A stretch of 64,000 bases of DNA from Obrimoposthia wandeli (taxonomy: Eukaryota): assembly GCA_977020255.1 (NCBI GenBank), contig CDROCS010003745.1:496001-560000 (forward strand), in the 5' to 3' direction. Both the position numbers and the translations under genes were made by a program. Positions 556 through 33,600 of the stretch are shown piece by piece. The first letter of the stretch is position 1, and each line of letters begins with the position of its first letter. Under the pieces are notes generated by a model. That model ran no database searches and had not been told where the DNA came from. It saw only the letters and a program-made list of their open reading frames with translations.

Positions 556-681
556 ATGAGTTGTTTGGATTTGCTTGATGCGCTGCTCTCGATAAGATAA
601 TTCGTCCTTGAGTCTCTTGACCTCGCTTTCAGAGTTGTGGTGCAGTTTCTGGATTGACGACATTTCATCGCGCAACTTGTA
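556..681 (-). CDS. ERC: ERC exon S ([12 protein letters not shown]...[16 protein letters not shown])
   Basis: atctgcag| and |gtgagt; 126 nt; phase 0/0. Confidence 0.88.
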
Positions 682-3600
682 CTGCAGATGAAATGAATAA
701 ATGTTTTTTCACAATTAAAAATTTAATTGTATCTTAGATTTTACCTCTATTTTCTTTTAATGCGTGTTAATGTTATTAGTTCAGATGCACATTTTAAATG
801 AGTTTTAAAATAAATTTCTTCTTAAATGAAAACTTCGACAGAGAAATAAATATGAAAAAAAATATATTTTTACAAAGTTTTTCAGGAAAAATAAAAACAT
901 CTACTACTAATATTCGTTTTACTTTAAATTTAAAAACAGGAAATTTTCAATAATACGTATATTTAGTTTTGAGAATATATTTGATAAATCTGGAAAAGTT
1001 AATTTAACTCAATCAAGTTTTTAATGAAATTAATACATATATATTTATTGTTAGTGATAATTGACCTGAGAACACCAAAAGTCAACAGGTAATTATCAGT
1101 AGAAATAGGCAGAATTTTGAGTCTTTTTTAGAATAAAAAAGTCTCAAATAGAGGTTCAGTGGCCTAAATCACCTTAAAGGAATTGTGTTTTTCCTTAAAT
1201 ATATTTGGAATGAGTTTAATTAAAAAATTACACTTGAAAAACAACAGCAAATGTCCTATTTTTGCAAGATCCATTTGTCCCAGAAGTATGGAAAAGTATT
1301 TAAATTACAATATAGGAATCATAGGAAATAATTTTATATATTGTGAAAAAGAAATCAAATTTGTCGTTTATATTTTTTATATTTAAATGATATTATCTGA
1401 AATTTTCCGTCTTTACAATAATGGTTTTTTATTGTTATTTTTACTAAAATTTTGTTTTTTAGTAGATATATGGTTATATATCATTGTGACTAATTTCCAT
1501 TTGTCTAATTAAATTATATAAAAATGTTCTAAAATTTTTTTAGATCAACTCTTCTTTTTAATTTTTGAACCTTTTCAAAAAACATCATATAATTCTAAAA
1601 AATATAATTATTTACATTAGTTTTTTTTAATATTCTATTATAACTTGTATAAATTATAATCATTATAAATTTACATTTCATAAATATGTTGACTGTAAAT
1701 TTTTTTAAAAAATGCTCTGTTTTCTAAGATTTTATTTAATTTAAGAAATATTATGGTTCATAGTCGATTTTTGTTGAATAAATTCAATCATACAGCATAT
1801 AACAGCCTATATTCGTAGTTTAGACTTTTGTTCAGTCATGACAGATCTAAATAAAATGGCAATGTTATTAATTATTATTTTTATTTCAAATAAACAAATC
1901 ATCAAAAAACCATTAATAGTGAAAAATTAAATTAGCAATTTTATTTATACAATAATTATTAAACTCCAATTTCAGTAATATATTTACTGTACTTCTTTAT
2001 AATAAATTTCATTATATTATTTTAATTTAAACTCAAAAATTGCCTTAAAATAATGAGAGTAATTCAAAAACCATATGCTTAAAATTAAAAATTAAATAAA
2101 TTAATACAAATAATAAATTGTAATTGCATTATAAAAAAGACCTTTTAAAATGTACAAAATTATGTGCAAAATTTAAAATATTTTAGTTATTTTTGTAAAT
2201 TAGACAAAATGAGATTAGTTTCAATGTGACTATACCTAGATATATATAAAATTTTTAAATATATAATATAATACTAATGAATTTTTTACAAATTACGTTG
2301 TGTTTTTTTTGTAATATGTAAAAATATTCATTCTTCCCTTTTTTGTCCAGTATTTAAGTTTTTGATACGAAATTTCAAAGCTGATTTACTTTCTTTTGTG
2401 GAAATTATTTTTCTTTCAAATTATTAATCAAGTACATGTAAGCTTATTTTTACCTGTATAAGGTTAACTTTTTATTCAGAAAGATTGCGAAGTTCTCAGT
2501 TTAATTAGCAACATAAATCTGTAAATCGTAGATTAATTTCTTTGAATCAATAATTGTTAATGCTTTGAATATTTTCGTTTTATCTCAAAATTGCCCATTA
2601 AAATTTCTTTCTACGGATTTTATTCGCAAATTGATATTTTAATTACAAAGTTTCGATTAGAGAAATTTTATTTTGTAAGTTGCAGTTTTTAATCTTATAC
2701 GCTTTTAGTGACCCATCGTAGTTTTCTGCAACCCTAATTCGAAGAAGAAGATTATAATAATTTAACATGTAAATTGACTGAATGAAACAAAATGTAGTAT
2801 TAGTGCTAAGAATTACAGTGCGCGAAATTGAAATAGAAAATAATATCTAAATTGAATTATCTTCGTTGTGTAACTTGTAAAGCAGTATTCTCTTTTACAA
2901 TTTTTCACATTTTAATCTTATGCGATATATTTTGGATAATTTTTATTAGGAACATTTCTAATTTAATGTACTAAATTGAAAAGGTTAGTATCATTTAATC
3001 GCATCTAATAATTGATAGCACGACTATTAACTTTTATCAGTTCAACGATTAAAAGTTATTTAAAATTTGGAATATTCTTGAATCAAAATGTTTCTCTGGC
3101 ACTATCGTAGGATTTTCCATTTGGATAGCTTTTGTGTAGTTTCTGTACGATTTAAAACCAGGAATTTCATTTGTTTTGAATCTTTCTTTCGTGCGTTTTG
3201 CTGTATGAATTGTAGCTATATCTTGTTGGAGTAACCAGTTTTCTCCACATATAGCTTCAGCTACTAGTTTCATAAAATCGGTTAGTGTCTTAATTAACAA
3301 TAAAATAGGTTTATTTATCGGTATTTATTAAAATATATTATAAAATTAAAATGTTCACCTTTTTAAGTGAAAGAATAATGATTTCTTATTTCAATTTTGC
3401 AGCCAAGTTCATATAGTTTAGAACAGGGGTGCGTAACAAGCGGCCTGCGGGCCACATGCGGCCCTCTATGCAAGTTAGTGCGGCCCTCGCTAACAACATT
3501 TATTTTTTACCTTCTGCAGGATTTGAATCTGTTTCGCCACAGTAAGGTAAATTTTACAGTTTTAAACTCTAAATTCCAAGTGGCTCATTAAAACGATTTG

Positions 3601-30600: not shown

Positions 30601-33600
30601 TAAACCTTCTAAAATTACGAATACAGGTTAAAAAGATTTCAATTAAAATATATTAAATTAAAAACAATTTTTAAAAATTAGCTTTATTTATCAATAAACA
30701 CTAATTAAACTTATTTAATTTTATATTATATTTCTAAATACATATATAAAATTAACCATGTAAAAAATAATTAATAGTTATAGTTTAATAATTATATCAG
30801 ATTTTCTCTATGGTGATTTTTTTTAAATAAATTTTTAATATGTAAATTATTAAATAATAAGTAAATTAAATTAATCATATACGTTATTATGTTAATAAAC
30901 AAAAATTATAAATATCATTTTTAAATTATGTAACTAAAAAGATTTCCAAAGTTATTTGATATATAATTTTAACAACGAACTAATAAAAAAATATAGTTTA
31001 TTTCGTACATTATTAACTGTCAGCTTAATATAGATGAGCCAATGAAATCTAAACAGAAGTTAATATAAAATTAAACTAGTTTGAAGTGGGAATAAAAAAT
31101 ATATTTTCCTTGAATATTATTAAATATTTAAAATAACTTAGTTCATTATAACTTTCTTTTTTAATAACACGAATAACATGAATGAATTCAATTTTAGCTT
31201 TAATCGATAACCAATGCATTTTCTAAGATAATATGTTATACTGTATGTTTTCTTAAGTTGAAATACTTGAAATTGTTTGGCAGTTTAATTTGGAATTGTT
31301 ATAATTTTTTCTCAGACAATATTTACAAATCATTATCTTAACAGATATATATCTTCATTTCCTGCTTCTGGAGCAAATACAATTATATTTGAATGCTATC
31401 ATTGATATAGGAATTCAAATCAAACTGTTTCAATACATTTCGATATTATTATTCAGATATTTTTTTGTTTTTATTATTATCAATATTTTCTGGCAATATT
31501 CGAATTATTTTTTCTATCTTCTTATCATTTCTTCTACTGCACTTTAACATTTTTTAAAACAATAATATACTTACTGTCATGCTAATATATCATAAATTAA
31601 TGATTTTTCACTCAAATGAGCTTCCTGTTTCATGAGATTTTCCGAATAGTAAATTCTTCTGATTCTTCTTGAATTTCCAACATTTTACAGTAAGTTATAT
31701 TTCCTGGTAAATGGTTGTAATTATTGTAAGCATATATTTTAAATATTCTATCATTCGGTTTGTTATTTTAGCATTTCTGACCATTCTGCACTCATAGTCA
31801 TATCCTAAATATCCTAAGATGTGCATACATACACATTGCACCAGGATCGAGAAAATCACGTAAACATTTGGGTGTTTGTGGAAATACATTTTTTGATAAC
31901 ATGTACGATCTTGAATTCAATTCTGGCATTGATCAGTAGCCAATGAAGCTTCATTAAATCTTCAGTTGTACTTGCACTTTTCTTTTATGTGAATATAATT
32001 CAAACTGATGTGTTCAAAATTTTAGCAGCAGCTTATGCTTATGATTAAAAGTTATAATTATCTTATCATCGAGAATTAACCATTTTTTGATCAAATTTTT
32101 TGAACATAAAATTTAACACTTGAAGCTACAATTTCTAATTTAGGCTATCAGTGTTGAAAGCGAACGTTTTTGTCTATTTTGTGTTTAACATTTTATTATG
32201 TTTATACTATGTTGAATTAAAAGCAGAATCAAATAAAAATTATTTTCCGTGAAACATTTTTTTTTTCAACATAATTTATTTAAAATTAACTTGTGCGATA
32301 ATTATTAACGATTTCTGTTTTATTTATATAGTTTGTGATTTTAAAATAATTTAGAAACGTAAAAGTAAATATTTTAGAAATTATTTATCGTTCCCTTTTC
32401 TTATATCATTTACTATTTTATTCAAAATGTCAAGTAGTTGTTTTGAAAAGGTGAATACAAAATTTTGATTAATTCTCTAAATTGTAGAAAAAATTTAAAA
32501 TATTAAATTTGATTTATATGTTAAAATTTGTATAAAATAATGGTTTTTTGACACCATGAATAGTTAAATATTTTTAGTGGACTGTGGACTAAATATTATT
32601 TAAAACTACTCACGCATTCGCTCTCAATTGTCTTCAGCTGAGTCTCCTTATCTCTGAGATCTTCCTGGGCCGTCAAGAGCTGCTGACTGAGGTTGTTCCT
32701 CTCTTTTTGAACAATTTCTAGGCTCTGTTTTTGGTCTGTTACCTGGAAATTTAATCCAGAGTTTATATTTCAACAAAAGTATCTTCTAAGTATGTAAACG
32801 AAAATTTCTTTTTGAAAATGTTTTGAGAAAAATCTCATATAAGACAACGGATATTTATTTGAATATAATAAACTTCACAAATGACAAATGATTACCAGAT
32901 GCATGGATTAAGTCTTTCAAAATCTCAAAACGTTTTATGACACCCTTCAACAAGTGTTCTATCTGAATTGCTTGACATATGCAATGAAGGAAGTCTTTTA
33001 AATCAGCATAAATCTCTATATATTTCCGTGACAGTGCTTAGATTCTAAAAAATTAAATATCCATCGATAACAAATTTCAAAAATTTACACCTTTATGTTT
33101 GCAAAGTTACAAGTTTCTTTTGACACATGAGATCTAGTATTAAGATACACCAACCGATTGAGACTTTTCAATGAACCAATTTTCCTTGGTGACTTTTTTA
33201 GAAATCAATCAACCGACGACTTTTGATTGTTTTTCTATTTGGTATTAATTCGAGAAAAAAAATATCATGTAGTATATTGTGACAGTCTTGCAACCTTTTT
33301 CGCAAGTTCACACAGTTTGACTCATATTTTCTTTGCATTTTCTCGTCCTAACAACTCTTAAATAGAACCATTTTTCTTTGATTATAACCAACTTTCTTTC
33401 AATTTATCCAAATCTTTTGGTCAACCAAAGTTTATTGATTTGAATATGAGTTTTCATTTGTGATTTGGAATCCATACACTACATGTATACTTAAAATAAA
33501 GTTATTTCGCTAAAATATCATAGATAGAGCTATGGCTAATATTTGTTTCTTCAATAATTTCATTTATTATTATTCGAGAATTTTCAGTTACAAAATTTCG

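What the first reader, a model, noticed from the sequence alone, without database searches (positions are those of the whole stretch)
556..32742. ERC C-terminus lengthened by repeated symmetric exon modules of about 43 codons
Seen in sequence: exons J (129 nt), N (141), P (129), Q (105), R (129) and S (126) are all phase 0/0. Each ends in a related motif: [80 protein letters not shown] and [16 protein letters not shown]. The junctions ESEC|[12 protein letters not shown] and EKEC|[12 protein letters not shown] also echo each other. Established: vertebrate ERC has one such segment (SLAEKETHLTNLRAER), and Drosophila Bruchpilot is an ERC N-terminus plus a long coiled-coil extension that builds the T-bar. 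Inference: this lineage extended ELKS by serial exon duplication into a Brp-like filament, possibly independently of insects. Any module could be skipped in frame, giving a possible splice-tunable length for the active-zone scaffold.
Basis: partly seen in the sequence, partly recalled or inferred. Interest (0 to 1): 0.72.

Follow-up and report, generated by a model that had tools for sequence, protein, structure and literature searches.

The report
Flatworm ELKS gene with modular insert
The repeated 43-codon exons are real and related, but they are the start of an old 28-exon, ~1,300-residue insert inside the synaptic scaffold gene ERC/ELKS that a planarian-like flatworm, flukes and tapeworms share exon for exon, so it is not a recent extension in this genome.

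Summary
Observation confirmed. Exons J, N, P, Q, R and S lie on the minus strand with the stated sizes, phase 0/0 and motifs. Their similarity exceeds composition-shuffled, heptad-shuffled and reversed-profile controls.

Interpretation partly supported.
- The gene is ERC/ELKS/CAST (Pfam Cast).
- The modules do not extend the C-terminus. They are the first 10 of 28 consecutive phase-0/0 exons (1,296 aa over 98 kb).
- This block sits between "ALRESV" and "EKDANIAL". That spacing is exactly 100 aa in 94 of 101 short ERCs (molluscs, a hemichordate and vertebrates among those named) and 1,389 aa here.
- The conserved ERC C-terminal exons follow 66-68 kb beyond the window.
- The same exon series occurs in Schistosoma japonicum and Echinococcus multilocularis, with identical sizes for K, Q, R, S and T and matching intron positions. 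This genome branches outside the sampled parasitic flatworms, so the insert is old and widespread in flatworms.
- About half the exons are recognisable paralogues that align in register with exon ends, which supports ancient tandem exon duplication.
- A mammalian ERC1 has eight copies of the motif, not one.
- Splice tuning is untested, because no RNA runs were found. One module (U) was lost whole in flukes.
- I found no paper describing this insert.

The parts
59413..59519 (-). ERC core exon 6 (phase 2 in, 0 out)
   Evidence: Exon chain. tblastn to the fluke ERCs P0039/P0151 gives 61-64% identity.
56065..56280 (-). ERC core exon 6b, frameshifted in this assembly copy
   Evidence: tblastn finds it split over two frames. 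The second copy on contig C384 has a different 1-nt indel, which suggests assembly errors.
54040..54207 (-). ERC core exon 7 (168 nt, phase 0/0), Pfam Cast positions 290-347
49047..49214 (-). ERC core exon 8 (168 nt, phase 0/0), Cast positions 343-405
47626..47780 (-). ERC core exon 9 (phase 0 in, 2 out), Cast positions 398-456
43896..44160 (-). ERC core exon 10 (phase 1 in, 0 out), Cast positions 454-541
42194..42384 (-). ERC core exon 11 (phase 0 in, 2 out), Cast positions 551-606
41573..41708 (-). ERC core exon 12
   Evidence: Intron position matches Echinococcus.
38769..38900 (-). ERC core exon 13 (132 nt, phase 0/0, probable GC donor). It holds the ALRESV anchor and is the last exon before the insert.
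32614..32742 (-). Insert exon J, 129 nt, phase 0/0, A-type module (ends [13 protein letters not shown])
   Evidence: 60% identity to Heterobilharzia. J-P align in register 1-42/1-42. Alignment A1.
27526..27654 (-). Insert exon K, 129 nt, phase 0/0, B-type module ([12 protein letters not shown]...)
   Evidence: A 43-aa exon in both Schistosoma and Echinococcus. K-R align 1-43/1-43. Alignment A2.
24497..24592 (-). Insert exon L, 96 nt, phase 0/0, Gly/Ser/His-rich linker ending LLHEKEQM
23270..23383 (-). Insert exon M, 114 nt, phase 0/0, B-type module
21640..21780 (-). Insert exon N, 141 nt, phase 0/0, A-type end ([13 protein letters not shown])
20499..20576 (-). Insert exon O, 78 nt, phase 0/0
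   Evidence: Intron position matches Echinococcus.
17593..17721 (-). Insert exon P, 129 nt, phase 0/0, A-type module
8644..8748 (-). Insert exon Q, 105 nt, phase 0/0, A-type module. A 35-aa exon in Schistosoma and Echinococcus too.
4975..5103 (-). Insert exon R, 129 nt, phase 0/0 (alternative acceptor at 5097), B-type module. A 43-aa exon in Schistosoma and Echinococcus.
   Evidence: R-V hhalign probability 97%. Alignment A2.
556..681 (-). Insert exon S, 126 nt, phase 0/0. A 42-aa exon in Schistosoma and Echinococcus. The insert continues beyond the window start with 18 more exons, down to contig C3745:430996.

Best explanation
The window holds the middle of the only ERC/ELKS/CAST locus that the Cast-profile search of this assembly found; the assembly is an AT-rich flatworm genome of 1.35 Gb.

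What the insert is. Exons J to S are the first 10 of 28 consecutive symmetric (phase 0/0) exons. Together they encode a 1,296-aa, mostly coiled-coil insert. It sits at one site of the Cast domain, between 'ALRESV' and 'EKDANIAL', whose spacing is otherwise fixed at about 100 aa across animals.

How it arose (inferred). About half of these exons belong to two recognisable module types. A-type modules end in L-x-EK-x-x-x-I-x-x-x-E-x-E-C/N/Q. B-type modules start F-Q-x-Q-x-DEI-x-RL. They often occur as A-B pairs: J-K, L-M, Q-R, U-V, h-i and j-k. All resemble the ancestral segment at that site (vertebrate ...SLAEKETHLTNLRAER...). The most likely origin is repeated tandem duplication of phase-0 exons within one ancestral phase-0 intron region, followed by divergence and the addition of low-complexity linkers.

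When it arose. This happened before the split between this flatworm and the parasitic flatworms, because flukes and tapeworms keep the same exons one for one. Since then only whole modules have been gained or lost.

Likely function (inferred). The insert would be a segmented rod of up to about 190 nm. It would separate the N-terminal active-zone-binding two-thirds of ERC from its conserved C-terminal segment. That would be an analogue of Bruchpilot's elongated scaffold or tether, with a different architecture and an independent origin.
For: Identity of the gene:
- Pfam Cast hits exon by exon, at positions 8-69, 289-609 and 709-758, with a 110-kb gap between positions 609 and 709.
- The N-terminal exon contains SIKTFWSPELKRER.

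Gene model:
- 33 exons from exon 11 to the C-terminal exons splice into 1,545 aa without a stop. All 28 insert exons are phase 0/0.

Position of the insert:
- The ALRESV-to-EKDANIAL spacing is exactly 100 aa in 94 of 101 short ERCs, 1,370-1,493 aa in flatworm ERCs and 1,389 aa here. Without the insert it would be 93 aa.

Orthology:
- The insert is colinear with Heterobilharzia P0039 and Opisthorchis P0151.
- About 1,150 insert residues align with flukes (35% identity) and tapeworms (32%).
- 24 of 33 intron positions match Echinococcus within +/-1 alignment column.
- Exon sizes K 43, Q 35, R 43, S 42, T 39 and k 50 aa are identical in this genome, S. japonicum and E. multilocularis.
- A quick tree places this genome outside monogeneans + flukes + tapeworms (SH-aLRT 98).

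Paralogy of the modules.

Module turnover: exon U is present here and in Echinococcus but absent from fluke proteins and from the S. japonicum T-V intron.

Neuronal expression of the tapeworm ELKS/CAST gene: bioRxiv 10.64898/2026.08.23.746249.
Against: - Module similarity is modest. Pairwise identity is 14-30%, and most hhalign probabilities are 75-97%.
- Only about half of the exons show it. The long exons a, c and h, the linkers and the poly-Q exon i have no clear module origin, so part of the insert could have come from elsewhere.
- Coiled coils share features by convergence, and my nulls (shuffles, heptad shuffles, reversed profiles) may not capture all of them.
- There is no transcript evidence for this genome.
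- The final short exon was not found.
- Exon 6b is frameshifted in both assembly copies.
- The tree is a quick search with long branches.
- Earlier-branching flatworms were not sampled.
- The proposed function is entirely inferred.
Confidence: 0.8

Rival explanations
1. This particular lineage recently lengthened the ERC C-terminus by serial exon duplication, and the modules are alternatively spliced cassettes that tune the length of the scaffold.
For: All insert exons are phase 0/0, so any of them could be skipped in frame. Modules are related. Whole-module differences exist between flatworm classes: U is missing in flukes, and tapeworms have about 47 extra aa between J and K.
Against: The exon series is shared one for one with flukes and tapeworms, with identical exon sizes, and this genome has no extra modules. 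The insert is internal and the ERC C-terminus is retained. Each module is conserved across classes, which suits constitutive use. In S. japonicum the missing U module is absent from the DNA, not skipped. No RNA runs were available.
Confidence: 0.1
2. The similarity between exons is generic coiled-coil and ELKS-type composition, not common descent. The insert arose by another route, such as capture of exons from another coiled-coil gene or exonisation of intron sequence.
For: The core motif is common throughout all ERCs, including the conserved core, at 0.5-0.9 per 100 aa in both short and long forms. Some core-insert profile pairs also score above the null (cE8-c, cE8-M, C1-c). Half of the insert exons show no module signal. 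There are weak Pfam hits to unrelated coiled-coil families (HIP1_clath_bdg, Rod_CreS).
Against: Scores exceed the heptad-preserving and reversed-profile nulls, and the excess is specific to insert-insert pairs: 6.9% exceed the threshold, against 1.6% in the null and 2.4% for core-insert pairs. Alignments run in register with exon starts and ends (J-P 1-42/1-42, K-R 1-43/1-43, T-V 1-38/1-38). The motif sits at a fixed 4-residue offset from the donor site in 9 exons. There are 29 consecutive phase-0 introns, against mixed phases in the core.
Confidence: 0.1

Closest known systems
ERC/ELKS/CAST family (vertebrate ERC1/ERC2; short ERCs of molluscs, nemerteans and hemichordates)
   Same: Pfam Cast domain, N-terminal SIKTFWSPELKRER motif, ALRESV and EKDANIAL segments, and the recurrent x-EK-E/D-x-x-I/L-x-x-L motif. 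The tapeworm orthologue is a marker of a neuron cluster.
   Different: 1,296 extra residues in 28 phase-0 exons sit at a site whose length is exactly 100 aa in 94 of 101 short ERCs. Total length is about 2,200-2,470 aa, against about 925-1,250. Flatworm models end ...NTRAMLMEEKMSHH, without the GIWA tail.
Drosophila Bruchpilot (BRP)
   Same: An ERC-family protein that long coiled-coil sequence has roughly doubled in length. BRP adopts an elongated conformation and builds T-bars (PMC2712991, PMC4485229).
   Different: BRP is described as an N-terminal ERC homology region plus a plectin/myosin-like C-terminal half that lacks ELKS homology (PMC5402947, PMC7360120). Here the added sequence is internal and the ELKS C-terminal segment is kept. 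Short ERCs in other spiralians argue for an independent origin. No BRP sequence could be fetched, so direct similarity was not tested.
Database entries for parasitic-flatworm ERC (for example S. japonicum 'ERC protein 2', 2,394 aa; E. multilocularis 'ELKS:Rab6 interacting:CAST family', 2,465 aa; O. felineus TGZ72103.1, 2,354 aa; H. americana CAH8560104.1, 2,283 aa)
   Same: Orthologues with the same insert, exon series and intron phases.
   Different: These are unannotated predictions. I found no paper that notes or analyses the insert. This genome adds a branch outside the sampled parasitic flatworms, which dates the insert earlier.

Membership tests
ERC/ELKS/CAST | Match to Pfam Cast (PF10174) above the gathering score of 29.1 bits | tested here: met
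   Single exons score 62.4, 43.9, 37.6, 36.3, 33.8 and 30.7 bits, in colinear order along the model.
ERC/ELKS/CAST | Conserved N-terminal motif S-I-K-T-F-W-S-P-E-L-K-[KR]-E-R | tested here: met
   Translation of L018:7500-7823:- contains SLNSIKTFWSPELKRERALRKDE. There are 379 homologues at E<=0.001.
ERC/ELKS/CAST | Conserved C-terminal coiled-coil segment (...EVLEMKQEALLAAISEKDANIALL...) | tested here: met
   The exons at contig 429929-429790 and 428165-428018 encode ...KEILEIK|QEALTASICEKDANIALLQM..., matching Cast positions 709-758.
ERC/ELKS/CAST | C-terminal GIWA motif (PDZ/RIM binding; specific to B isoforms in vertebrates) | tested here: inconclusive
   Fluke and tapeworm orthologues end ...EEKMSHH or ...EQRKAQ without GIWA. 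The last exon of this gene was not found.
Bruchpilot | N-terminal half homologous to ERC/CAST | tested here: met
Bruchpilot | C-terminal half is a large plectin/myosin-like coiled coil without ELKS homology (PMC5402947, PMC7360120) | tested here: not met
   The added coiled coil is internal, and the ELKS C-terminal homology follows it.
Bruchpilot | Sequence homology of the added region to the BRP C-terminal half | not testable with these tools
   No BRP sequence was returned by the three word searches or by the representative search. Pfam gives only weak generic coiled-coil hits in the insert.
Tandem exon-duplication repeat array | Symmetric exons of one phase, similar length, and detectable paralogy in register with exon borders | tested here: met
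   28 of 28 exons are phase 0/0. Ten of the 28 are 39, 42 or 43 aa long. The remaining evidence is the in-register hhalign pairs and the motif at a fixed offset from the donor site. The paralogy signal is clear for only about half of the exons.

The most novel reading that the evidence does not exclude
The 28-exon block may act as one large in-frame cassette. Splicing exon 13 directly to exon C1 keeps the frame and restores a spacing of 93 aa, against 100 aa in short ERCs. One gene could then make both a canonical short ELKS and a form longer by up to about 190 nm, a Brp-like tether that flatworms evolved independently of insects. Skipping of single modules could tune reach at individual synapses.
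Probability: 0.15. Interest if true: 0.8.

Novelty: new variant of a known kind. Interest (0 to 1): 0.55.

Why it matters
ERC/ELKS is a core scaffold of the presynaptic active zone. The best-known lengthened form, Drosophila Bruchpilot, builds the T-bar and tethers vesicles. This work shows a second, independent doubling of ERC length. It is conserved exon by exon across flatworm classes, which implies strong selection, and it has a different design: an internal insert with the ELKS C-terminus retained. It gives a natural comparison for asking what a long ERC does at a synapse. It is testable by RNAi and imaging in planarians and schistosomes. It may also relate to flatworm presynaptic dense structures. 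Finally, it is a clean example of a protein rod built from symmetric phase-0 exons within a site that is otherwise fixed in length. The proteins are already in databases, but I found no paper analysing them.

Tried and rejected
- RNA evidence. Splicing and skipping therefore could not be tested, and read laying was not used.
- Bruchpilot comparison. Three word searches and the representative search returned no insect BRP.
- Pfam on insert exons and on P0039. Only weak generic coiled-coil hits.
- Terminal exon. A regex and ORF search of the 12 kb downstream of contig 428018 found no candidate.
- First exon finder. My first strict exon finder missed most exons, so I replaced it with a composition and splice-site chain plus homologue guidance.
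- hhalign. Two all-vs-all runs timed out and a background job was killed. The comparison was finished.
- 'Isoform' differences between the two Heterobilharzia models. These do not fall cleanly on insert modules, so I did not use them as evidence for skipping.
- Pseudogene reading. I rejected it. More than 40 exons are open and conserved, and the two assembly copies of exon 6b carry different single-base indels.
- Two-gene reading. I rejected it because the ERC C-terminal exons follow the insert colinearly in every orthologue.

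
Full report
OBSERVATION

Reading outward to stop codons and splice signals gives these exons:
- J 32742-32614 (129 nt)
- N 21780-21640 (141 nt)
- P 17721-17593 (129 nt)
- Q 8748-8644 (105 nt)
- R 5103-4975 (129 nt, with a second acceptor 6 nt downstream)
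- S 681-556 (126 nt)

Each lies between AG and GT and each is phase 0/0. K (27654-27526) is a further 129-nt phase-0/0 exon. The window has no N and is 28.5% G+C.

WHAT THE GENE IS

A search of the window's own assembly with Pfam Cast (PF10174) shows the window is C3745:496001-560000. Minus-strand exons match Cast positions as follows:
- positions 8-69, upstream of the window
- positions 289-347, 343-405, 398-456, 454-544 and 552-609, inside the window
- positions 709-758, at contig 428021-428170, 68 kb beyond the window start (exon-wise Pfam scan)

They are not after its end.

I fetched the flanks and chained exons by composition, splice signals and phase. I then curated them against homologues. 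From exon 11 to the conserved C-terminal exons the model has 33 exons and 1,545 aa without a stop.

The insert itself has these properties:
- 28 exons (J to k), contig 528742-430996
- 3,888 nt of exon in 97.7 kb
- 1,296 aa
- every exon phase 0/0
- introns of 82 to 20,958 nt, median 2.6 kb
- only 10 of the 28 exons in the window

Core exons have mixed phases.

The joined model was used only inside scripts, for alignment with fetched homologues.

RELATIVES

The N-terminal exon found 379 relatives. The longest was P0039 (2,283 aa, Heterobilharzia americana; names). It carries the same series colinearly:
- ...LKTLEQEC|FRNYLPELEKL... (J|K)
- ...SEKTEKLRQLEQDC|AKSHIEEIKRQK... (Q|R)
- and so on to ...LTASLCEKEANIALMEL...

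A word search with the P0039 insert region returned only flukes and tapeworms (Schistosoma, Trichobilharzia, Calicophoron, Fasciola, Opisthorchis, Dicrocoelium, Taenia, Echinococcus, Mesocestoides, Sparganum, Spirometra), at 2,237-2,465 aa where complete. The core region added a partial monogenean sequence.

Short ERCs of 925-1,250 aa are found in bivalves, gastropods, cephalopods, nemerteans, a brachiopod, a hemichordate, amphioxus and vertebrates.

The distance from 'ALRESV' to 'EKDANIAL' is:
- exactly 100 aa in 94 of 101 short ERCs (97-98 aa in the rest)
- 1,370-1,493 aa in flatworm ERCs
- 1,389 aa here
- 93 aa here if the 28 exons are removed

AGE OF THE INSERT

My model aligns over about 1,150 insert residues with flukes (35% identity) and with tapeworms (32%). 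That makes it about equally distant from both.

A quick maximum-likelihood tree puts it outside monogenean + flukes + tapeworms (SH-aLRT 98; long branches, quick search only). Notes by other agents on this genome call it a planarian-type flatworm. Those notes are unchecked but consistent with the tree.

I mapped exons of the Echinococcus multilocularis gene (L020, 43 exons) and the Schistosoma japonicum gene (L024, 40 exons):
- 24 of my 33 exon ends coincide with an Echinococcus exon end within +/-1 alignment column.
- Exon sizes K 43, Q 35, R 43, S 42, T 39 and k 50 aa are identical in all three genomes. P is 43/42/43.
- The flanks of these exons read ag...gt in frame, so phase 0 is conserved.

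The series therefore predates the split of this flatworm from the parasitic classes, and this genome has no extra modules.

Differences between classes are whole modules:
- Exon U (42 aa) is present here and in Echinococcus. It is absent from fluke proteins and from the 881-nt T-V intron of S. japonicum.
- Tapeworms have about 47 extra residues between J and K.

ARE THE MODULES RELATED?

Smith-Waterman scores among the 28 exon peptides exceed composition shuffles (z=20) and heptad-preserving shuffles (z=12). The best pair, R-V, scores 75, above the 95th percentile of the null maxima (61-69).

With 11-species profiles per exon, hhalign gives:
- R-V: 97% probability, 37 columns
- N-T: 96%
- N-X: 95%
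- T-V: 94%, columns 1-38/1-38
- J-P: 93%, columns 1-42/1-42
- K-R: 78%, columns 1-43/1-43

Of 780 pairs, 35 exceed the 99th percentile of a reversed-profile null and 19 exceed its maximum. The excess is 6.9% of insert-insert pairs, against 2.4% of core-insert pairs and 1.5% of core-core pairs.

The motif ends exactly 4 residues before the donor site in J, N, P, Q, R, U, V, h and k, with near-variants in K, S, T, Y and j (p=2e-5).

MAFFT alignments show two module types:
- An A type, flush with the exon 3' end, consensus L...L.EK...IK..E.E.
- A B type, consensus ..EI.RLR....E...R.....K.L..R

The two types tend to alternate: J-K, L-M, Q-R, U-V, h-i, j-k. A third example lies outside the window (ETEC|FQQQADEIERL, contig 455466|452775).

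The conserved exon C1 aligns with the A type. The vertebrate segment at this site scores best against modules h, J, R and P. This fits an origin by duplication of the ancestral unit.

The signal is weak or absent for the long exons a, c and h (apart from their ends), for the linkers in L, W, a and h, and for the poly-Q exon i.

- The motif is not unique in vertebrate ERC. A pika ERC1 has eight matches, including EKETHLTNL, DKDKKIAEL, EKDANIALL and EKERTIERL, at the same density as here.
- The extension is internal, not C-terminal.
- It is old and widespread in flatworms, not a feature of this lineage alone.

FUNCTION (INFERRED)

If fully helical, 1,296 residues would span about 190 nm (0.15 nm per residue, own knowledge), broken by several Gly/Ser/Pro/Gln-rich linkers.

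The literature gives these points of comparison:
- In mammals the N-terminal coiled coils bind active-zone partners, and Rab6 binds a 17-residue stretch of the C-terminal coiled coil (PMC7360120).
- BRP stretches from the membrane into the cytoplasm (PMC2712991, PMC4485229).

The flatworm design would hold a retained ELKS C-terminus far from the N-terminal anchor. The tapeworm ELKS/CAST gene is a marker of a neuron-like cluster.

I found no paper on a long flatworm ERC.

LIMITS

- No run on record as RNA was found for this organism, so exon use and skipping are untested.
- BRP could not be compared directly.
- The last exon was not found.

Noticed in passing
window 56065-56280 (minus strand) and contig C384:20908-21169: ERC exon 6b is frameshifted in this contig by one extra T. 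The 98.7%-identical second copy on contig C384 lacks that T but has an extra G 72 nt further on. Each copy is broken at a different place and a mosaic of the two would be open, so these look like assembly indel errors and not gene decay.
   Followed up: partly
G000:C384:1-30000 versus C3745:530982-561136: Contig C384 is a second, near-identical copy (probably a haplotig) of the 5' half of the ERC locus. It ends inside the intron before exon J.
   Followed up: partly
window 36574-36879 and 34115-34396 (minus strand): Two unrelated open reading frames of 102 and 94 aa sit in the 6-kb intron between exon 13 and exon J. Neither has a significant Pfam match. They may be remnants of mobile elements.
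   Followed up: partly
contig C3745:489095-489220 (L009:3095-3220, minus strand); L024:60035-60915: Module U (42 aa) is present in this genome and in Echinococcus, but has been lost whole and in frame from flukes. The S. japonicum T-V intron is 881 nt and has no trace of it.
   Followed up: yes
window 38768-38769: Exon 13 appears to use a GC donor (cag|gcaaga) instead of GT.
   Followed up: no
window 5097-5103: Exon R has two acceptors 6 nt apart (ctag|TTCCAG|AAG), which could add or drop the residues Phe-Gln. The orthologous exon size of 43 aa fits the upstream acceptor.
   Followed up: no
proteins P0192-P0194 (Mytilus, 1,741-1,759 aa): Mussels have, besides a normal ERC, long proteins that combine a Cast domain with PF25561. 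This is a different kind of ERC lengthening and I did not examine it.
   Followed up: no
contig C3745:452593-452775 (L013, minus strand): Insert exon i carries a run of about 20 glutamines that is not conserved in length in flukes or tapeworms (their exon is 37-38 aa, against 61 aa here).
   Followed up: no
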